Virus record (IMG/VR): IMGVR_UViG_3300037805_000644 | Location: 1 to 64,000 of that record | DNA length: 64,000 nucleotides | Reading direction: 5' to 3' (one strand) | Part shown: positions 22,872 through 30,500 of the stretch, in pieces | Layout: every line of letters starts with the position of its first letter | How positions within the stretch are numbered: position 1 is the first letter of the stretch | Position numbers and translations under genes: made by a program | The notes under the pieces: generated by a model | What the model was told of the DNA's origin: nothing | The model's database searches: none | What the model saw: the letters and a program-made list of their open reading frames with translations, nothing else

Positions 22872-23753
22872 TTAACTACTATGTGGTGGGCTACCGTTAC
22901 CTCTTTTATCTGGCCCCATGAACATTTCGCAGAATTCAGGGATAGCGATCCTCATCCTTTTTCGGGCAATCTCCAGGTATTTCGGGGAGATATCCACACC
23001 TAAGAAGTCTCTGAGGTTATTGCCGGCAGCAACGCCTGTGGTGCCACTGCCACAGAAAGGGTCAAGAACCAGATCACCCTCTTTGGTGAACAGCTTAACG
23101 AAAAAATCAGGAAGGGCCACTGGGAATGCGGCTGGGTGTCCTAGATTTCGGGTCTCCGTCGGGAGGTGCAGGACATTGCTCGGGAAAACCATTTTCCGGT
23201 CTTTCCAAACCCCCGTGTTTTTCGTGTACCCTGAACCCGTCCCAGACATCACCTGACCAACGCTCTCCCCTTGTGTCCAATCTCCCACCGGAACACGGAC
23301 ATTATCCTGGTACATCAAGAACTTGCGGTTCTTGTTAAACTGTAGGATCCGTTCCCAAGAATCCCTGAAACGATTAGGCCATTTACCCGGTGTGGTGTTC
23401 TTTTTGTGCCAGATGAATTCCTCAGTCCAAATCCACCCCTGAGAGCGCATCGCCTGGATCAAATCCAGAACGTAGGTATGCCGCTCCCCGCGATGCACAT
23501 GCTCCTTGATGTTCACAAGCAGGGTGCCCGAGTCCTCCAACACCCTGTAAAGTTCCAAGGAGACATCCCTCCACCACTCCACGTAATCGTTTGCAGGGAT
23601 GCCCCCGTAAGTGGCTTTCCGCTGAGTTGCATAGGGAGGTGAGGTGAAGATAAGCTGGACACTCCCACTCTCAAGCCCTCCCAACGCCAGGGGCACAGCC
23701 CCTTCAATCAAATCCCACTCAACCACGCTTGTCTCCTTCGGAGTTAGCCGCAT
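22872..23753 (-). CDS. Complete beta-class N4/N6 DNA methyltransferase
   Basis: FTSPPY catalytic motif, HPAAFP, VLDPFCGSGTT SAM-binding motif. Confidence 0.92.
   Translation of the reverse strand: MRLTPKETSVVEWDLIEGAVPLALGGLESGSVQLIFTSPPYATQRKATYGGIPANDYVEWWRDVSLELYRVLEDSGTLLVNIKEHVHRGERHTYVLDLIQAMRSQGWIWTEEFIWHKKNTTPGKWPNRFRDSWERILQFNKNRKFLMYQDNVRVPVGDWTQGESVGQVMSGTGSGYTKNTGVWKDRKMVFPSNVLHLPTETRNLGHPAAFPVALPDFFVKLFTKEGDLVLDPFCGSGTTGVAAGNNLRDFLGVDISPKYLEIARKRMRIAIPEFCEMFMGPDKRGNGSPPHSS
22876..22901 (-). promoter_or_regulatory. Recurrent promoter-like motif
   Basis: GGTAAC-N14-TAGTAG. Confidence 0.7.
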
Positions 23754-24362
23754 GTACAGGTTTCCGGGCCGTCAGAAAGGGCTCCCAGGAGGGGCGCACG
23801 GCTGTGCCGTAACCATCCCAGAACTGGGCCTCCTTTGTGGTGGGTTCAGTGATGTACTGCACCCCTGCCGAACCGGCATCCCCACTGCCAACCAGGGTGT
23901 CGAACCCCCGACCACCCTTGCGCTTAGAGTTCGGGCGACTGGAGGGGTTGACCCCCACCGGCGTCCCCTCGAAACCCAACCGCTTGTCGATGGATTTGCT
24001 GATGTTCAGGTTTTTAGGGAAGCCTGTGCCGTACCCCCAGGCTTCGAGGCTGAGGTCCGTGAACCCCGCCTCCTCAAGGACCTGTGCCAGCCGGTGATAG
24101 GTGCGGGCGGCCGAGAACACCTTGACCACCCCGCCAGGCTTGAGCTTCTGGTAAATGAGGGTCCAGAGATCTGCATCGAAAGCGATCCCCGAGCGGTCCC
24201 ATTTCTTGCCCATGAATCCAATCTCAGGTATTATTACTCGTAGGGGGGATCGGTGATGACAGCGACGATTGAGTCGTCGTCCAGCTCCAGCAGGCGCACT
24301 TGGCAAGCACCCAACCACAGCAGGAATGTCAGATCCCCCCTACGAGCCTTATTTTCCAGCAT
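23719..24362 (-). CDS. Methyltransferase fragment A (catalytic half), interrupted by an 11-nt gap after DPPYE
   Basis: ..DDDSIVAVITDPPYE [TAATAATACCT] (E)IGFMGKKWD..LKPGG..RTYHRL..YGTGFPK..WDGYGTAVRPSWEP..ARKP; 209 aa if the gap is bypassed; no FxGxG. Confidence 0.75.
24237..24346. repeat. Perfect 15-bp inverted repeat of the DPPYE codons
   Basis: CTCGTAGGGGGGATC (24237-24251) / GATCCCCCCTACGAG (24332-24346). Confidence 0.9.
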
Positions 24363-24374
24363 CGAGGGTTCCTC

Positions 24375-25175
24375 ATGAAAGTTCAACGCACATGCCCAAT
24401 ATGCGGCAAGGTCTACAAAGCAGACAGTACCCGGCTCAGGCATGGGAGGCAGACCACCTGCTCTCGTGCTTGCTCTTACTCGCTCCGGGGGGGGAAACGA
24501 GCTACCTCCACTGAGATCACCTGCACCACCTGCGGGAGTTCTTTCACACGCCCCCCCAGCCAGATGAAATCACGCCATGGGGGATCTTTCTGTTCAACTG
24601 AGTGCCATTACAAAGGTCGGGGTCTCGGCCACGTCCAGAGAATCGTGGAGGACGGATATGACCTCACGCCCGAGGGGCGTGCCTCTCTTTCCGTTCGCCG
24701 CAGGGAGGCCAACTTCAAACGCAAAGCCGAAGGCAGATACGGCCACACCGAGGAAACCCGAAAGAAACTCTCAGCCTCAACCGCTAAGGCCATTGCTGAG
24801 GGCCGGATCCCACGAATCTCCAAGTTTGAGCGGGAGGTGGGGGTGGTGCTGAGGAGCTTGGGGGTCAAAGCCCAACCCCAGCACGGCATCCGGGATGCTC
24901 AAGGGAGATTCCGTGCGGTGCTGGATTTCTGGCTGCCCGAGCTGGGGGTAGGTGTGGAAGCCAACGGCACTTTCTGGCACGCCGACCCTCGGGTTTTCCC
25001 CCAAGGCCCGGAGCACGCCAGCCAAAAGCGAACCGCAGAGAGGTATGCCCGGAAAATGGCTCTGTTAAATCTGCGGGGGGTTCCCGTGATCGAGGTGTGG
25101 GAGAAAGATTTCAGGGAGGACCCTAAGGGGGCCGTTCAGGATGCCCTTCGAGGTCTCAACGCCCCTGGTGATTGA
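24375..25175 (+). mobile_element. Vsr/DUF559-like homing endonuclease with Zn-ribbon repeats and NUMOD3
   Basis: CPICG..CSRAC, CTTCG..FCSTEC, HTEETRKKLS, SKFE..LDF..VEANGTFWH..IEVWE. Confidence 0.85.
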
Positions 25176-25249
25176 GGGGGCCGGGATCCGGCTTTATCGA
25201 TGGCGTCCCGTGCTCGGGCTTTCTGATCTCGTACTCGGCTCATCCCCAT
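25136..25249 (-). CDS. Short ORF behind a promoter; possible orphaned N-terminus of fragment A
   Basis: MGMSRVRDQKARARDAIDKAGSRPPQ runs into the endonuclease 3' end. Confidence 0.35.
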   Translation of the reverse strand: MGMSRVRDQKARARDAIDKAGSRPPQSPGALRPRRAS

Positions 25250-25271
25250 ACCCTTCCGGTGGTCTAGGGGA

Positions 25272-25298
25272 CTACTCAAAACAGGGGTGAGTGTTACC
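25272..25298 (-). promoter_or_regulatory. Promoter motif variant
   Basis: GGTAAC-N15-GAGTAG. Confidence 0.55.
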
Positions 25299-25572
25299 AG
25301 CCCTGGCGGTTGACCGAGCAGGCGTCGATCTCCCCACAGGAGCTGATCTTGGCGAGGCAGGTGGGGTTGAGGGCGTGCCCTCGGGACTGGGTGTCCTCAC
25401 AGAACTGCTGGCAGCTCATCCCGTTGCCCAGGGGCTCACCCTCGGGGCAGCCCAGGTCTGCCATGCGGACACAGGCCGGCTTGCACTGGTCAGTGTCGTT
25501 GGGCTCCACGGGTTTGGGCTGGGGAGCCCCACAGCCCATAAGGAGCAGGACCATCAGGATGATTCGGCTCAT
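25294..25572 (-). CDS. Cys-rich lipoprotein
   Basis: MSRIILMVLLLMG|C lipobox followed by eight further Cys. Confidence 0.8.
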   Translation of the reverse strand: MSRIILMVLLLMGCGAPQPKPVEPNDTDQCKPACVRMADLGCPEGEPLGNGMSCQQFCEDTQSRGHALNPTCLAKISSCGEIDACSVNRQGW

Positions 25573-26816
25573 GGTGTGAAGCTCGCGAAGTTCAAGATGG
25601 TCATGTTGAGCATGGAGGCACTATGCAAGGCCCCTGCCTCATTGTCCGTCAGGATGGGGAAAGTGTCCCCATCCCCCATCCTGAGCCACGCCTGCATGTC
25701 TGCCACGAAAGGCTTGGCGTTCAGATCGTCAGGAGAGCCGCCGTTGTAAAGGCTGGTGACATTGGCACCACTCAGCTCCACATCGAAGTAAGCCCACTCG
25801 TTGATGTAACCCAGCAACCAGTTTGCCTCCCCCTGCCCTCCCTGTGCCCTTCCGATGCGGAAAGACCCGGACCCTCCAGCACTCCCTGTCATGTTGTTTT
25901 CATTCGTGGTGTTTACCTGGAGTGCCCCATCCACATAGATCTTGATCCCGGCCGGGGTCTCCGTGCCGTCATTGGTGACCACGAGGTGGTACCAAGTGTT
26001 CCCGAGAAGGGTGCCGGCCTCAACCTCCAAGCTGGTGTTTTTGCTGTCCTTGAAACGAACTACAAGCTCACCCGAGACCTTGACCTCGAAAGCGATGTTA
26101 TCGTTTTTGGATCCGAAAGCCCAGATGTCGGAATCCACGAGGGTAAGGAGATGCACCCACTGGGAGATCGACCACGCCTGACTGGAGTCCCGCTCAATAG
26201 CCGCAGTGGTCGTGACATCAAGGTACTGCTTGAAACTAGGACCGTCAAAGCGTACTGAGTTGGTGTCCGAAAACCCCGGCCCAGATGCCAGCACCGTGAG
26301 GTTCAGATTGGCGGTGGTGGTCCCGTTCCCGTTGACTGCGGTGATCGGAATCACCACGGCACCCACAACTGTGGTCGATCCAAAAATGGTGCCCAGCTCA
26401 TTGTTGACGGCCAGGCCAAGGGGCAGCCCTGAGGCGTCAAAGTAAGTGGGGCCCTCTGTGGCGACAATCTGGTAATTGAAAGGCTGGCTTGCCACCACAC
26501 TCTCAGTGAGAGAGGAGGTGATCGTGGGCTTGTTCCCCCCGGGGCCCCCGCCAGCCAGGGCGTTGAACTCGGCGTTGAGGTAATTGACCACCTCGCCCAC
26601 GTTCGCACCCGCCGCCGTTCCGTCCTGTTTCAGTACCTCCGTGAAAGGTGCGGAAGCAATCTCCCGCCACCCCACGGGTCCATGCAGGTCGTAGATGTCG
26701 ATGAGGCCATCATCATCCTCAACTGCCTGGAGCGAGTTGGTGAATTTGGTGGCGACAGTGGAGGGGTCAAACACCACTGACCCTGCCTCATTGTCCCTGT
26801 AGATTTTGACTGCCAC
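25569..26816 (-). CDS. Ig-like plus LamG/ConA domain protein, likely virion-associated
   Basis: PTITS..FNYQIVA..SGLPLGLAVN..GTIFG; WYHLVVT.DG..IYVDG..IGR..GYINE. Confidence 0.8.
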   Translation of the reverse strand: MAVKIYRDNEAGSVVFDPSTVATKFTNSLQAVEDDDGLIDIYDLHGPVGWREIASAPFTEVLKQDGTAAGANVGEVVNYLNAEFNALAGGGPGGNKPTITSSLTESVVASQPFNYQIVATEGPTYFDASGLPLGLAVNNELGTIFGSTTVVGAVVIPITAVNGNGTTTANLNLTVLASGPGFSDTNSVRFDGPSFKQYLDVTTTAAIERDSSQAWSISQWVHLLTLVDSDIWAFGSKNDNIAFEVKVSGELVVRFKDSKNTSLEVEAGTLLGNTWYHLVVTNDGTETPAGIKIYVDGALQVNTTNENNMTGSAGGSGSFRIGRAQGGQGEANWLLGYINEWAYFDVELSGANVTSLYNGGSPDDLNAKPFVADMQAWLRMGDGDTFPILTDNEAGALHSASMLNMTILNFASFTP

Positions 26817-26826
26817 GGTAAAACCC

Positions 26827-27570
26827 TTAGAAGTGCTTGATAAAGAAACCGTTTACCGTCACCGAGGCGGCGGCACTGCACAAGACCTCGATGGTGGCGC
26901 CTGCCGCCAACACCTGTTCTGAGCCGATGTAGAATTGCAGGGTTTCCACTCGGGGGTAAGCAACCCCAGCACCCTCATCGAGAGAGGACAACCCCTTGGT
27001 CAACTGGAATCCCCCAAAGGCAGGGAAATTCAGGCGGACGGACAGCCGTGCGTTGTTCACTGTCGGTGTGACGGTGAAGTCTGCACGAAACAGCAGCACA
27101 TCACCCACCGTCAGGTCATCAAACAGGAGGGCGTTCCCCACGGTGTCCCACAGCTCCTCAACACCTGTCGGTGCCCAGGTTTTGGTGGTCTGGGGCCCAA
27201 GGCCATCGTTTGTCAGAGGCGTCCAGGTGTCTGCCACCAGCGCGAGGGGGGCTGCGATTGTCCCCAGATCGTTGTAATCCATGAAACCAAACCACTCCTG
27301 GGTGGCTCGGTGCATTTCGGACCCCACTTTGAAGAGTGCTGTGATCAACCCCCGATCAATGAACCCCCGTAGGACTCCGCTCTCGTAAGAGGCTGCCACG
27401 TCGCTGGAGTAAAACAACTCCAGCGTTCCCGTGGTCGGGACATAGACGCCACCAGCCCGGACGGAACCGCCAGCCCGGCCCCTCCCCAGGTCATTAACCA
27501 CGATGTCCTGGATCAGCAAGGGTGCCGCGCCCCCAACCAGGGTTACCTCAATGTATGGTCCAAAAGCCAT
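26827..27570 (-). CDS. Putative structural beta-rich protein
   Basis: GAGGAGG SD; jelly-roll-like composition. Confidence 0.55.
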   Translation of the reverse strand: MAFGPYIEVTLVGGAAPLLIQDIVVNDLGRGRAGGSVRAGGVYVPTTGTLELFYSSDVAASYESGVLRGFIDRGLITALFKVGSEMHRATQEWFGFMDYNDLGTIAAPLALVADTWTPLTNDGLGPQTTKTWAPTGVEELWDTVGNALLFDDLTVGDVLLFRADFTVTPTVNNARLSVRLNFPAFGGFQLTKGLSSLDEGAGVAYPRVETLQFYIGSEQVLAAGATIEVLCSAAASVTVNGFFIKHF

Positions 27571-27608
27571 GCTCAGCCCTCCTCATAGAACACCCGTGGA
27601 TAATCAAA

Positions 27609-28406
27609 TTATTCACGGTAAGGCTCAAAGCCCTCCTGGGCAACCCAGAAATCCTTGGAGGTGGGGGAAGCAATCAGCTCAGGAGACACGAGGCCATACC
27701 CGTCATCTCCCCAGGTCACCCCCCAGGAGTTCTCGATGAGGAACATGCCGTCCACATAGCCCACGATAACGACGGCATGGAGACCTACCCGGTCCTCTCG
27801 GGGGACCGGCTTGAGGGGGACCAGGGGACCTTTGCTCTTGTAGTGCTGGTACCAGTTGTCCCCCACATTGGTGCCGAACACCACAGGGTTTCCCGCCCGC
27901 AAGCAGTTGATCACCTCGGTGACCCGAGCGGCACCCGTGGACCGGATTTTGAAATAGCTCTCGATCTTGTGGAGGTAAGCAACCCGCAAAGACATGAAGC
28001 TCGGGGGGGTGTTCACCTTGTCGAGGTCGAACGGCCAGTTGGCCTCAGGGGGCACACCGAACCGACGCAGCACATTGAAGGCGTGGCTGACATACGTCCC
28101 CTCATCGTTGTGGGTCTCGGGGGGGCTCATCAGCTCTCGGGCCAGGTAATAAACGGCCAGGCGACTCAGATCCACATGGGCTGCCAGGCCGTGCTTCTGG
28201 ATGCGCTTGATCTCCAACGCCTTGATGCAGGCGTTGGCTACACAAGAGTTGGACCACCTCTGGTCATGGCGGGGCCCCGAGAAAGGGCGGAGGTCAGCAT
28301 CGCCGGAATCCTCATAAACCATTTGTGCCTTGAGGCTGTCCTCATACGACCAATGGCTAGGGTTGTCCGGTTCCTCCCGGAACCCCTTCAACGTGATCGG
28401 GTTCAT
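27609..28406 (-). CDS. Papain-like (C1) cysteine peptidase
   Basis: DQ..SNSCVANA, HAVVIVGY, ENSWG..WGDDGYG. Confidence 0.9.
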   Translation of the reverse strand: MNPITLKGFREEPDNPSHWSYEDSLKAQMVYEDSGDADLRPFSGPRHDQRWSNSCVANACIKALEIKRIQKHGLAAHVDLSRLAVYYLARELMSPPETHNDEGTYVSHAFNVLRRFGVPPEANWPFDLDKVNTPPSFMSLRVAYLHKIESYFKIRSTGAARVTEVINCLRAGNPVVFGTNVGDNWYQHYKSKGPLVPLKPVPREDRVGLHAVVIVGYVDGMFLIENSWGVTWGDDGYGLVSPELIASPTSKDFWVAQEGFEPYRE

Positions 28407-28656
28407 CGTGGATCCTCACCTGTTTGAAATAACCAGAAGCCCCGGGGAGTACCCTCTCCAGCTCGGGGATAGGGCAACCCTTGGCGCAGAACGACTTGGA
28501 GCATCCTGCCTTATGGACCAGGATCACATTGGCACCAAACCCACCAGAGGGCAAGCGGCTGCCATCAATGTTGACGGCACCTGTCCCGTGGGTTTCAACA
28601 TTGGCGACGATACTGGGCTCGCCGAGGGGCTTGCGGAGCATGTGGATCACGTACAT
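28357..28656 (-). CDS. Methyltransferase fragment B (central region)
   Basis: LRKPL..SIVANV..HGTGAVNIDGSR..ANVIL.H..C..GCPI..L..GASGYF. Confidence 0.75.
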   Translation of the reverse strand: MYVIHMLRKPLGEPSIVANVETHGTGAVNIDGSRLPSGGFGANVILVHKAGCSKSFCAKGCPIPELERVLPGASGYFKQVRIHDEPDHVEGVPGGTGQP

Positions 28657-30500
28657 CAGTCTTCCCCAAACATGGCGTCAAACAGGTCGGGCTCTTCGGG
28701 ATCAGGCTCGCTTTCGTGCCTCTGATCAGTTGCCAGATCGAGCTTGCGGTACCCGGGGAGCCTTTGGTCCCAGTGCTCAATGCGGTTGGTGGAGATCTCC
28801 ACGTACTCCGGGGTCATGTCGATGCCCGTGAAATCGTGGCCTGTCCTCAAGCAGGCAACTCCTGTGCTGCCTGACCCCATGAAAGGGTCCACCACCCGGC
28901 CCCTTGGCACATCCCGCAGCAGGGTCTGCATGAGCCTCCAGGGTTTTACTGTGTTGTGACTCATCCCTACTGCCGTCTGAAACGTAGGGCAGTCCCGTAC
29001 CGTGAGGTTCCACACATCACCTTTGTAAGGGGTCGGGGTGATCCCTTGAACATAGGAGAGCCGGTATTCCACGCTTTCATGTTCCAGGATGGTGGGTCGG
29101 GTAGGTTTACGGCGCTCCTGCTCCCGGTCCAAGGCGTAAAAGCGCATTTGGTACGACGGCAGGGTCTCCTTGAACTTCCGACTCCCAATTTTGCCCGGCT
29201 GCGCCCCATAGCGGTGCAGGTTGCCCTTAGACCCCAGGGCCTCCCCCAGCAAACGCATCTGCGAGGCGAGATCTGGAGAGACGGTTTTAGCCTGGCGGTA
29301 TGTCCTCACCTTGCCGCCATCTCCTGCCATGTACCCCTCGAACACTGCTTGCCAAGTGGACCGCTGCCGTTGCCAGATCGTGGGGGGTAGCCGCTTGTTC
29401 GACGCCCCACACGGGGACCATTCCCGGAACTGCCCCCCGACCTCCGGGTCGAACCCGATGACCTGGACTGCCTTGGTTCCCTTTTTCGGGTACTCCCCCA
29501 GATTGAATCCCCGACCCTCAAAAAACCGACGAAGCCGGTTGATGTAGTCCGTCTCGTCCTGGTGGAGAGTGAACGAGGGGTACACGTTGGAACCGTGTCC
29601 CGCACGCTGGAGCACACCCTCTGCCAGCCACAACCCGAATACCCACCACCACTCATCCGGCCGGTCGTCCTTGATCCCTATGTCCACCAGCAGAGGGGTC
29701 ATCGTGTAATCCCCTCTGCGGATCGCTTGAGCCTCCACCCACCCCACGTTACCGCCGGTGATGTTCTTGCCTTTCCGGGTGGGCCTCCAGATGAGGAACG
29801 GGTGGTTGTCTGATGCCAGGGTGGTGTAGTTCGTCCCCTGCACTGCGATCTCGTACAGGTGGTCGCTAGTGTACGGGTGGTGGCTGATGTCCTCAATGGC
29901 GTGGAAACGCCCATCCGACCCCAACACCCGGTGGGCCAGGGTGACCTCAGAGATGGGCCGGTACCCTTGTTCTGTCATCACGAAAGCATCAGGGTGCAGG
30001 CAAGGGTGGTGATTCTTGACCCCCTGGGCCGTTCGGGAAGCCCCTGCCCGAGGGCTCTTGAGGCCGTCCGACCCTTCCTTACGCCCAGTGGCAGCGGCGC
30101 CAGTCTGCTCAGGTAGACCCTGGCACCCTGCCTCACGCTCAGCTCGGCTGACCTTGGCCATGTAGTGGAAAGGATCGGAGGCGTCATCGACCACCAGGAA
30201 CGTATCCCGGACCTGGAAGCCCCCGTCCTCCAGGTTGACCGCCCCCTTGTGCCCAATGGGGTTGTCCTCAGGGGCAACCACCATGAGGTGCGCCCCCGGC
30301 TTGAGGACCCTCAGCAGTTGGACGGTCATGGCCTTGTCAGGGGTCCCCACGACGAGGAGACCTGTTAGGGCTCCATCGGCGATGGAGCCCCAGTCCACCT
30401 TGGACATGTTGGGGATGAACACTGCCTCAAGATAGGGCTCGGGAGGGCTCAGGAACGTCCGTAGATAGTCGGACAAGCCCTTGGGGATAGGACGGCTCAT
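28656..30500 (-). CDS. Methyltransferase fragment C (SAM-binding half) with intein
   Basis: Degenerate LRVLKPGAHL..EDGGFQVRD; FHYMAKVSRAEREAG..NHHP|TVKP..VVDPFMGSGSTG; no DPPY. Confidence 0.85.
   Translation of the reverse strand: MSRPIPKGLSDYLRTFLSPPEPYLEAVFIPNMSKVDWGSIADGALTGLLVVGTPDKAMTVQLLRVLKPGAHLMVVAPEDNPIGHKGAVNLEDGGFQVRDTFLVVDDASDPFHYMAKVSRAEREAGCQGLPEQTGAAATGRKEGSDGLKSPRAGASRTAQGVKNHHPCLHPDAFVMTEQGYRPISEVTLAHRVLGSDGRFHAIEDISHHPYTSDHLYEIAVQGTNYTTLASDNHPFLIWRPTRKGKNITGGNVGWVEAQAIRRGDYTMTPLLVDIGIKDDRPDEWWWVFGLWLAEGVLQRAGHGSNVYPSFTLHQDETDYINRLRRFFEGRGFNLGEYPKKGTKAVQVIGFDPEVGGQFREWSPCGASNKRLPPTIWQRQRSTWQAVFEGYMAGDGGKVRTYRQAKTVSPDLASQMRLLGEALGSKGNLHRYGAQPGKIGSRKFKETLPSYQMRFYALDREQERRKPTRPTILEHESVEYRLSYVQGITPTPYKGDVWNLTVRDCPTFQTAVGMSHNTVKPWRLMQTLLRDVPRGRVVDPFMGSGSTGVACLRTGHDFTGIDMTPEYVEISTNRIEHWDQRLPGYRKLDLATDQRHESEPDPEEPDLFDAMFGED
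28953..30002 (-). mobile_element. Intein (350 aa) with LAGLIDADG endonuclease
   Basis: CLHPDAFV...MSHN|T; FGLWLAEG and FEGYMAGDG. Confidence 0.92.

What the first reader, a model, noticed from the sequence alone, without database searches (positions are those of the whole stretch)
23719..30500. DNA methyltransferase fractured into three genes in scrambled order (C, B ... A)
Seen: fragment A (23719..24362) has DPPY and ends at ARKP. Fragment B (28357..28656) starts at LRKPL and ends at GASGYF. Fragment C (28656..30500) resumes at FHYMAK..ER..NHP/TVKP..DPFMGSG but lacks DPPY. From recalled family knowledge these pieces tile one contiguous phage beta-class MTase almost without gaps. They are transcribed in reverse order with about 4 kb of unrelated genes between B and A. 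C also keeps a degenerate copy of part of A (LRVLKPGAHL..EDGGFQVRD). Inference: a heteromeric MTase assembled in trans, needing both intein splicing and ribosome hopping. Two-subunit C5 MTases (AquI, EcoHK31I) are known; I know no three-part amino-MTase.
Basis: partly seen in the sequence, partly recalled or inferred. Interest (0 to 1): 0.82.

Follow-up and report, generated by a model that had tools for sequence, protein, structure and literature searches.

The report
Conserved split modular phage DNA methyltransferase
A large marine phage encodes one DNA methyltransferase as four separate pieces in scrambled order; the same breakpoints recur in dozens of related phages, so this looks like a working enzyme built from exchangeable parts rather than a broken gene.

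Summary
On the minus strand, the pieces of one CcrM-like beta-class amino-methyltransferase lie in the order C, B, about 4 kb of unrelated genes, then A.

There are four ORFs, not three. A is itself broken one codon after DPPY into A1 (42 aa) and A2.

The split is conserved, not decay:
- Related uncultured phage contigs have the same three breakpoints.
- A genes stop at ...WEPxxxARKP.
- B genes run from M..RKPL..GxGxLNID to ..ASRFFxQV.
- C has an eroded A-like module (CN), a LAGLIDADG intein and the motif-I half (CC).
- Order and copy number vary, up to 7 B and 4 A per locus.
- Natural fusions A-B-C, B-C and C-A exist.
- In bacterial genomes the B module sits almost always inside a single chain.

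In an AlphaFold model of a natural full fusion, A plus CC form the methyltransferase fold. C alone gave no methyltransferase match among the listed fold hits.

Best reading: a heteromeric, modular enzyme in which B acts as an exchangeable recognition module. This is inferred, not shown.

Hopping cannot join A, B and C. It remains a serious candidate only at the A1|A2 break.

The window's own B looks eroded.

The parts
28656..30500 (-). Gene C (614 aa): CN module, intein and CC half. Translationally coupled to B, with a TGATG overlap.
30003..30500 (-). CN (residues 1-166). An A-like half-domain in which motif IV is eroded (GTPD where DPPY would be), followed by FHYMAK..ER..NHHP. It is conserved in about 65 protein clusters.
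28953..30002 (-). Intein with a LAGLIDADG endonuclease domain (residues 167-516). It has Cys1, the block-B His, terminal His-Asn and Thr+1, and sits inside the HP|TVKP motif.
   Evidence: Z 28.6 to the TliVMA intein
28656..28952 (-). CC (residues 517-614, plus the stop codon). TVKP, motif I (DPFMGSG), and an acidic C-terminal tail ..DLFDAMFGED.
28357..28656 (-). Gene B (99 aa). A minimal recognition-type module: RKPL..GTGAVNIDGSRL..ANVIL..GASGYFKQV. It lacks variable region 1 and several near-invariant residues of the family.
24234..24362 (-). A1 micro-ORF (42 aa from ATG 24362, with GAGGA 8 nt upstream). It ends ..AVITDPPYE followed by TAA TAA. DPPY is at 24251-24240. The ORF is also open from an upstream ATG at 24443.
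24214..24236 (-). A1|A2 junction. Stop TAA at 24236-24234, second TAA at 24233-24231, and a GAG at 24225-24223 that matches the codon before the stop. ATT GGA TTC follow, in the A2 frame.
23719..24213 (-). A2 (164 aa from ATG 24213). MGKKWD..LKPGG..EEAGF..YGTGFPK..GTAVRPSWEPFLTARKP plus a 12-aa tail that carries the ribosome-binding site of the next gene.
24375..25175 (+). Free-standing homing-endonuclease-like gene, divergent from A1 and 12 nt from its start. Associated mobile element, not an enzyme part.
25294..28406 (-). Unrelated block between B and A: a papain-family C1 peptidase, a 247-aa protein, a 415-aa LamG/He_PIG protein and a 92-aa protein.

Best explanation
The window, part of a 223-kb marine phage contig, encodes a beta-class (CcrM / M.BceJIV-like) amino-methyltransferase as separate polypeptides that assemble after translation.

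**Shown**
- The parts are A1 (strand plus DPPY), A2 (the rest of the catalytic half, ending at the ..EPxxxARKP strand), B (a self-contained module bounded by an RKP strand and an ASRFF strand), and C (an eroded A-like module CN, an intein, and the motif-I SAM-binding half CC).
- The same breakpoints are conserved in many related phage contigs.
- Order and copy number vary, and natural fusions across each breakpoint exist.

**Inferred**
- After the intein splices out, CC pairs with A to complete the Rossmann catalytic fold, so that DPPY lies beside the SAM site.
- B docks as the DNA-recognition module. Where a phage carries several B (and A) genes, they give one core several specificities.
- CN correlates with A being on another chain. 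It probably acts as a scaffold or pseudo-partner that holds CC and recruits A.
- The likely biological role is self-methylation of phage DNA against host restriction.

**Open**
- A1 and A2 may be joined by a short ribosomal hop, or may stay separate.
- The window's own B is the most eroded B seen, so specificity or activity in this particular phage is uncertain.
For: **Homology and tiling**
-.

**Conservation of the architecture**
- About 65 clusters share CN-intein-CC at 45-66% identity, and none has DPPY.
- Related loci show A ending at RKP, B starting M..RKPL and ending ASRFFxQV, and C following or preceding them.
- 31 of 32 A-end signatures stop within 13 aa of RKP.
- Copy number varies. 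L011 has six B, then C, two A and one more B. L026 has four A, three B and one C. L007 has two A and three B.

**Natural fusions**
- P0023 is A-B-CN-intein-CC. P0058 is C-A. Many proteins are B-C. P0122 is B-B-B-CN-CC and P0123 is A-B-B-B-B-CC.

**Structure**
- AlphaFold model of P0023 (pLDDT 81). Beta-class methyltransferases (2zie Z 22.3, CcrM 6pbd Z 21.4, RsrI, MboIIA, M.BceJIV) align over model residues 1/2 to about 880, with about 200-220 residues aligned. That is A plus CC.
- The window's C alone (pLDDT 85) gave only inteins and endonucleases in the 50 listed matches, and CN residues 93-165 are poorly ordered.

**B module**
- It has constant ends and variable cores.
- 55 of the best 150 B-profile hits are stand-alone proteins of 139-230 aa.

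**Other**
- Gene borders are translationally coupled.
- Inteins also sit in A2 of relatives L005 and L008.
- In bacterial genomes the B module lies in a single chain with DPPY and FxGxG in 59-61 of 80 loci, so the split is derived.
- The DNA order is confirmed by another assembly, and no rearranged form was seen.
Against: - No interaction, splicing or methylation was measured.
- The structural argument rests on a fused relative, and its alignment contains unsplit enzymes that may bias A-CC pairing.
- A half Rossmann fold on its own chain, and DPPY on a 42-aa ORF, have no characterised precedent that I know of.
- The window's B has lost near-invariant residues: GRWP is GGFG, ASRFF is ASGYF, GTVA is PSIV. 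It also lacks variable region 1 and has a 20-aa tail overlapping the next gene.
- In this phage A lies 4 kb from C, which loses the coupling seen in relatives.
- C keeps a conserved SAM motif but lacks motif IV, so it could have a role of its own.
Confidence: 0.6

Rival explanations
1. In this particular phage the set is partly or wholly decaying. The family architecture is functional elsewhere, but here B is eroded, A has been separated from C by inserted genes, and the enzyme is inactive or reduced to a non-specific remnant.
For: - The window's B lacks several near-invariant residues and variable region 1.
- A word-based search with B found only itself.
- A block of unrelated genes and a homing-endonuclease gene lie between B and A.
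- A complete second methyltransferase lies next door and could make the split one dispensable.
Against: - All four ORFs are intact with plausible starts.
- A1, A2, CN and CC keep the family's invariant residues.
- The intein keeps its catalytic residues.
- The closest relative, L005, also has a C1 peptidase and other genes between C and A, yet keeps A1|A2.
- The same sequence is found at 99% or more in four seawater runs.
Confidence: 0.17
2. The pieces do not form one enzyme. C (CN plus CC) is a catalytically dead SAM- or DNA-binding protein with its own role, and A and B act separately or with another partner such as the neighbouring complete methyltransferase.
For: - C has a conserved motif I but no motif IV in any of about 65 clusters.
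- CN resembles the A half, so C could in principle fold by itself.
- Eroded-motif partners are known in this class: METTL14 and MTA9 (PMC7544214).
Against: - A alone lacks any SAM-binding half.
- C, A and B are co-located and translationally coupled in most relatives.
- Natural fusions join them in one chain.
- In the fused model A, not CN, completes the fold with CC.
- The model of C alone gave no methyltransferase among the listed matches.
Confidence: 0.12
3. The fragments are rejoined into one chain before or during translation, by DNA rearrangement, RNA splicing or long-range ribosome hopping, for all breaks.
For: Short duplicated stretches flank the breaks: ARKP / LRKP, and ASGYF / DPFHY.
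Against: - The order C, B, ..., A on one strand cannot give A-B-C by deletion or bypass.
- About 4 kb containing an opposite-strand gene lies between B and A.
- No joints were seen in four runs.
- The A|B, B|C and C|A borders in relatives have normal start codons overlapping stops.
- No split-intein halves are present at the breaks.
Confidence: 0.03

Closest known systems
Orphan DNA methylase family of actinophages (Dorothy_75 / PopTart_63 type; Mycobacterium phage Nala gp101) - PMC9957025, PMC11855218
   Same: - Same enzyme family: A2 is 45% identical to Nala gp101 (E 6e-35).
- That family is also invaded by an intein, LAGLIDADG endonucleases and an HNH element at conserved sites.
- The HNH insertion in L005 leaves the host frame open, like ShiLan.
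   Different: - Those enzymes are single polypeptides with in-frame insertions.
- No separate A, B and C genes, no CN module and no module arrays are described there.
Solved beta-class amino-methyltransferases: CcrM (6pbd), M.BceJIV (8urk), M.RsrI, M.MboIIA, M1.HpyAVI, TTHA0409
   Same: Motif order IV then I, the HPTxKP motif, and the fold: Z 20-22 for the fused relative.
   Different: Each is one chain, usually a homodimer. None has a CN module or a detachable B module.
Two-subunit C5 methyltransferases M.AquI and M.EcoHK31I (from my own knowledge, not checked here)
   Same: The catalytic domain is divided between two polypeptides that must associate.
   Different: They belong to the cytosine-C5 class, have two parts, and have a fixed arrangement. 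They have no module multiplicity, intein or duplicated pseudo-half.
Heterodimers with an eroded-motif-IV partner: METTL3-METTL14 and MTA1-MTA9 (PMC7544214)
   Same: Beta-class enzymes in which an active subunit pairs with a degenerate paralogue.
   Different: There, both partners are complete folds and the active one has its own SAM site. Here motif IV and motif I lie on different chains.
Type I HsdM/HsdS systems, and the multispecific C5 methyltransferases of Bacillus phages SPR and phi3T (from my own knowledge)
   Same: Recognition is carried by separate subunits (HsdS) or by tandem exchangeable recognition domains. This is analogous to stand-alone or tandem B modules.
   Different: Different methyltransferase classes and unrelated recognition folds. 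No split of the catalytic fold.
T4 gene 60 translational bypass, and synthetic 'stop-hops' (PMC5009743)
   Same: At A1|A2 a stop codon follows the take-off codon, which is usually Gly. A matching or synonymous codon lies shortly downstream, and a homing-endonuclease gene is adjacent in the window.
   Different: - The gap is 3-12 nt rather than 50.
- No stem-loop or nascent-peptide signal was demonstrated.
- No product evidence exists.
'Fractured genes' (PMC2677866)
   Same: Genes in phage-like metagenomic DNA broken into pieces, with homing endonuclease genes nearby.
   Different: Those breaks are bridged by split inteins. Here no intein halves flank any break.

Membership tests
Beta-class amino (N6-A / N4-C) DNA methyltransferase, Pfam PF01555 | Motif IV (D/N/S)PP(Y/F/W) | tested here: met
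   DPPY at 24251-24240 in A1. It is absent from C.
Beta-class amino (N6-A / N4-C) DNA methyltransferase, Pfam PF01555 | Motif I FxGxG with the HPTxKP motif upstream | tested here: met
   NHHP|intein|TVKP and DPFMGSG in C. PF01555 scores 50.7 bits against a cutoff of 26.7.
Beta-class amino (N6-A / N4-C) DNA methyltransferase, Pfam PF01555 | Motif IV N-terminal to motif I in one polypeptide | tested here: not met
   The motifs lie on different ORFs about 4 kb apart, with the motif-I gene upstream.
Beta-class amino (N6-A / N4-C) DNA methyltransferase, Pfam PF01555 | Seven-stranded methyltransferase fold | tested here: inconclusive
   Met for the natural fusion P0023, where A plus CC score Z 20-22. 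Not seen for the window's C alone. A multimer of the window's parts could not be modelled.
Beta-class amino (N6-A / N4-C) DNA methyltransferase, Pfam PF01555 | SAM-dependent methyl transfer to DNA | not testable with these tools
   Needs expression and methylome reading.
Class 1 intein with LAGLIDADG homing endonuclease | Cys1, block-B His, C-terminal His-Asn, nucleophilic +1 residue, two LAGLIDADG motifs, Hint fold | tested here: met
   C167, H233, H515-N516 and T517 are invariant in 72 sequences. Z 28.6 to the TliVMA intein over residues 165-516.
Fractured genes bridged by split inteins | Intein N- and C-halves at the two sides of each break | tested here: not met
   A ends 0-13 aa after RKP. 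B starts M..RKP. A1 ends DPPY-x.
Programmed translational bypass (gene 60 type / stop-hop) | Stop codon directly after the take-off codon, with a matching landing codon downstream that restores the frame | tested here: met
   Window: GAG TAA ... GAG, with 11 nt between, which restores DPPY-E-I-G-F-M. Across 28 junctions, 26 landing codons are synonymous and 14 identical. The stop position was part of the search pattern. The landing match was not.
Programmed translational bypass (gene 60 type / stop-hop) | A single polypeptide spanning the gap | not testable with these tools
   Needs mass spectrometry of the junction peptide or a reporter assay.
Two-subunit C5 methyltransferases (M.AquI type) | C5 motifs (PCQ, ENV) | tested here: not met
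   All matches are to amino-methyltransferases.

The most novel reading that the evidence does not exclude
Two linked readings remain possible.

**(1) A family of natural short ribosomal hops at A1|A2**
- The gap, counting the stop codon, is 3-12 nt.
- The stop follows the codon after DPPY, and a matching codon lies just downstream.
- The G-L-E codons between the landing site and the Phe-Met vary synonymously: six different Leu codons, and GAG or GAA for Glu. So they are translated.
- Yet 16 of 28 junctions have no ATG, GTG or TTG in that frame.
- The junctions occur in all three relative frames.
- Two lineages changed the take-off and landing codons together: GAG/GAG in the window and CTT/CTT in L007.

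**(2) A combinatorial enzyme**
- One SAM-binding scaffold (C) is shared by several catalytic halves (A) and up to seven free-standing recognition modules (B).
- This would give a phage a set of methylation specificities from small exchangeable genes.
Probability: 0.3. Interest if true: 0.9.

Novelty: new variant of a known kind. Interest (0 to 1): 0.74.

Why it matters
- If the parts assemble, this would be, to my knowledge, the first amino-methyltransferase whose Rossmann fold, catalytic motif and recognition module lie on separate, exchangeable polypeptides.
- That would give a natural system for asking how split folds find each other.
- It would also show how phages diversify anti-restriction methylation cheaply, by adding small B genes.
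- It shows circular permutation and fission of methyltransferases caught in many intermediate states: A-B-C, B-C|A, C-A and C|A|B.
- The A1|A2 junction offers 28 natural sequence variants of a possible short stop-hop. A recoding review says no natural occurrence of in-frame stop-hopping is known (PMC5009743).
- Annotation pipelines see only the C-terminal 85 residues of C as a methylase and give A1, A2 and B no Pfam family, so such systems are currently invisible.

Tried and rejected
- **Megablast of the region against phage records:** no match.
- **Related-locus search with C alone:** found only the window's own contig, IMGVR_UViG_3300037805_000644. An alignment query was needed.
- **Word-based search with the window's B:** only itself.
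- **Pfam on A1, A2 and B:** no families.
- **-1 frameshifting on the C-run in GAT CCC CCC TAC:** rejected. It would remove the Tyr of DPPY, and relatives lack the run.
- **TGA read as a sense codon:** rejected. TGA ends neighbouring genes in the same loci.
- **NTG start overlapping the stop (NTGA) as a general answer for A2:** not rejected, but weak. It is CTG in most cases and is unavailable in the in-frame and +1 junctions.
- **Codon-level match of take-off and landing beyond 'both Gly':** not clearly above expectation. 20 of 28 pairs fit one tRNA.
- **Split inteins at the breaks:** none.
- **DNA rearrangement:** no joints between the pieces.
- **Reading CN's position in the fused model:** not possible, because coordinates are not returned.
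- **Literature searches for a split or multispecific amino-methyltransferase:** found none.
Full report
**1. What is in the window**

All relevant ORFs lie on the minus strand.

- **C (30500-28656, 614 aa).** Only its last ~85 residues match Pfam N6_N4_Mtase (E 2.9e-13). It has no DPPY.
  - Between NHHP and TVKP it carries a 350-residue intein with two LAGLIDADG motifs.
  - The intein has Cys1, the block-B His, terminal His-Asn and Thr+1, all invariant in 72 homologues.
  - Its model matches the TliVMA intein at Z 28.6.
- **B (28656-28357, 99 aa).** Its ATG shares one base with C's stop codon, giving TGATG.
- **Intervening genes.** After B come a C1 peptidase, a 247-aa protein, a LamG/He_PIG protein and a 92-aa protein. 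A plus-strand homing-endonuclease-like gene follows at 24375-25175 (phrog_559 and phrog_3339).
- **A.** It is two ORFs.
  - A1 starts at ATG 24362, with GAGGA 8 nt upstream. It ends ..ITDPPYE TAA TAA.
  - A2 starts at ATG 24213 and ends ..WEPFLTARKP plus 12 residues. It is in the frame 2 nt ahead of A1 (a -1 shift).
- **Neighbour.** A complete second beta-class methyltransferase (SPPY...DPFCGSG) follows at 23753-22872.

Aligned with Mycobacterium phage Nala gp101 and Pontimonas phage phiPsal1 methylase, A1, A2, B and the two extein parts of C tile the full-length enzyme. A2 alone hits 525 phage records annotated as DNA methyltransferase, best E 6e-35.

The first ~105 residues of C are homologous to the A region (29.5% identity to Nala 51-195, E 6e-6). 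GTPD stands where DPPY would be. I call this module CN.

A Logan contig from a seawater run, which may be the sample of origin, covers 23600-29599 with no differences. Three further seawater runs hold pieces at 99% identity or more. No joint links the fragments.

**2. The split is conserved and modular**

The window is part of IMGVR_UViG_3300037805_000644, 222,939 bp.

A search with C found 182 proteins. About 65 clusters at 45-66% identity share CN-intein-CC, and none of them has DPPY. They fall into these architectures:

- C alone, as in the window.
- C with the end of B at its N-terminus.
- B-C fusions that start exactly at ..ARKP..GTGxxNID.
- One full fusion, A-B-CN-intein-CC (P0023).
- One C-A fusion (P0058).

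I fetched contexts and mapped the modules. The pattern is uniform.

- A genes end ..ALKPAWEPxVVARKP, then 0-13 residues, then a stop. This holds for 31 of 32 cases.
- B genes begin M(I/V)VHVLRKPL.GTVA.NAL.HG.GALNID and end ..GGASRFF(K/Q)QV plus 2-4 residues.
- C begins M..L.DYL.T.ISPP.
- Borders are ordinary coupled overlaps: ATGA, GTGA, TGATG.

Order and copy number vary between loci:

| Locus | Arrangement |
|---|---|
| L010 | B, C, A |
| L011 | B x6, C, A, A, B |
| L007 | C, A1\|A2, A, B ... B ... B |
| L012 | A, A, B, C |
| L015 | A ... B-C, B |
| L026 | B, B, C (no intein), B, then four A |
| L005 (closest relative) | B-[HNH insert]-C, PhoH, C1 peptidase, 98 aa, A1\|A2 |

L005, like the window, has unrelated genes between C and A.

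A profile of 20 B modules hit 16,178 representative proteins at E <= 1e-3. Among the best 150, 55 are stand-alone B proteins of 139-230 aa matched end to end. Many fused enzymes carry 2-4 tandem B modules, for example P0123 (A-B-B-B-B-CC) and P0122 (B-B-B-CN-CC).

In bacterial and archaeal genomes the B module sits in one chain with DPPY upstream and FxGxG downstream in 59-61 of 80 loci. Most of the rest are cut by contig ends. So the unsplit form is the rule in cellular genomes, and fission is a derived trait of a group of uncultured, mostly large, phages.

Protein similarity has been kept across lineages that share only 35-60% identity. Inteins are also lodged in A2 of L005 and L008. Both argue against pseudogenes.

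**3. How it most likely works**

B has constant ends and two variable cores around a GRWPAN motif. That is the pattern expected of a recognition module. Its own N-terminal RKP strand duplicates the last strand of A, and tandem B copies each keep it. So B is an autonomous domain.

For the catalytic core I used a natural fusion as a proxy, because multimers cannot be modelled here.

- In the AlphaFold model of P0023 (pLDDT 81), solved beta-class methyltransferases align from residue 1-2 to about 861-883, with 200-220 residues aligned. These are TTHA0409 (Z 22.3), M1.HpyAVI, CcrM (Z 21.4), MboIIA, RsrI and M.BceJIV.
- That span is the size of A plus CC. So the fold is built from A and CC, and CN (pLDDT above 90) is a separate domain.
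- The model of the window's C alone (pLDDT 85) showed only inteins and LAGLIDADG enzymes in the 50 listed matches. CN residues 93-165 are poorly ordered.
- The C-A fusion P0058 and the frequent C-then-A gene order put motif I before motif IV, which is the non-permuted order of the fold.

I therefore infer the following. After splicing, CC pairs in trans with A. B docks as the recognition module. CN is found where A is on another chain, and serves as scaffold or pseudo-partner, comparable in spirit to METTL14 or MTA9 (PMC7544214).

Every step beyond the sequence anatomy and the model is inference.

One caveat applies to this phage. Its B is the shortest and most divergent seen: GRWP is GGFG, ASRFF is ASGYF, and variable region 1 is missing.

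**4. The A1|A2 break**

I scanned public collections for DPPY-x-stop, a short spacer, then FM(G/N)K(K/E/D)WD. The scan found 5 viral and 30 metagenomic stretches, giving 28 distinct junctions. The stop position was part of the pattern. The following features were not.

- The codon three positions before TTC-ATG in the A2 frame encodes the same residue as the codon before the stop in 26 of 28 junctions. It is the identical codon in 14.
- A hop between these two codons would always restore the canonical spacing DPPY-x-x-x-FM.
- The next two codons are Leu in 23 (CTT, TTA, CTG, CTC, CTA, TTG) and Glu in 22 (GAG, GAA). This synonymous variation shows they are translated.
- 16 of 28 junctions have no ATG, GTG or TTG in that frame after the last stop.
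- Gaps are 3-12 nt, and the junctions occur in all three relative frames.
- The window (GAG/GAG) and L007 (CTT/CTT) changed both codons together.

Evidence against a hop:

- Most pairs are simply Gly/Gly.
- 6 pairs are GGY/GGA and 2 are mismatched.
- In the -1 forms an NTG, usually CTG, overlaps the stop and could serve coupled re-initiation.

Natural short hops are essentially unknown (PMC5009743). I rate the hop at roughly 0.3-0.4 and separate A1 and A2 polypeptides at a similar level. Either way DPPY is under selection.

**5. Comparison and novelty**

The enzyme family is the phage orphan methylase family described as a hotspot for inteins and homing endonucleases (PMC9957025, PMC11855218). 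Those papers describe single polypeptides.

Split methyltransferases are known for the C5 class (M.AquI and M.EcoHK31I, from my own knowledge). Separate recognition subunits are known in Type I systems. I found no report of a split or modular beta-class amino-methyltransferase.

I file this as a new variant of a known kind.

Noticed in passing
window 24375-25175 (+): A free-standing homing-endonuclease-like gene with Zn-ribbon repeats and a Vsr/MTES_1575-like nuclease (phrog_559, phrog_3339). It starts 12 nt from A1's start, on the opposite strand. This is reminiscent of mobA next to T4 gene 60.
   Followed up: partly
window 22872-23753 (-): A second, complete beta-class methyltransferase (SPPY ... 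DPFCGSG; PF01555, E 1e-44) overlaps the end of A2. A GTG preceded by AAGGAG, 5 nt before A2's stop, looks like its real start and would couple it to A2.
   Followed up: partly
window 28659-28700 (-), and the C-termini of C homologues: A conserved acidic C-terminal tail, ..L.DLFG (window: DLFDAMFGED). From memory it resembles the sliding-clamp-binding peptides of T4/RB69-type polymerases, so C might be tethered to the replisome. Not tested.
   Followed up: no
L005:9660-10766 and L008:12264-13892: A2 of two relatives carries a further intein (a mini-intein in L005, full-size in L008) inserted at W.YG|C...N|SGFPK.
   Followed up: partly
L005:4285-7386: The B-C gene of the closest relative is interrupted by an HNH endonuclease gene in another frame, while the host frame stays open for 1033 codons. 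This is the behaviour reported for the ShiLan element (PMC11855218).
   Followed up: partly
window 28953-30002 versus L005:6055-7104: The intein is 80% identical between the window and L005, whereas the flanking exteins are only 43-48% identical. This points to recent horizontal spread of the intein.
   Followed up: no
L011:5541-8409: Six B genes in tandem have almost identical first 35 residues and divergent cores, each overlapping the next by ATGA or GTGA. A seventh B lies after the two A genes.
   Followed up: partly
window 27609-28406 (-) and L005:8243-9040: A papain-family C1 peptidase lies between C and A in both the window and its closest relative. Its role is unknown.
   Followed up: no
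L010, L011, L014 and L015 A genes: Unsplit A genes of a sister group carry a conserved 30-45 residue loop between DPPY and GGFMGK, exactly where other lineages have the stop. Other A genes have a Cys-rich insert after FMGKxWD.
   Followed up: no
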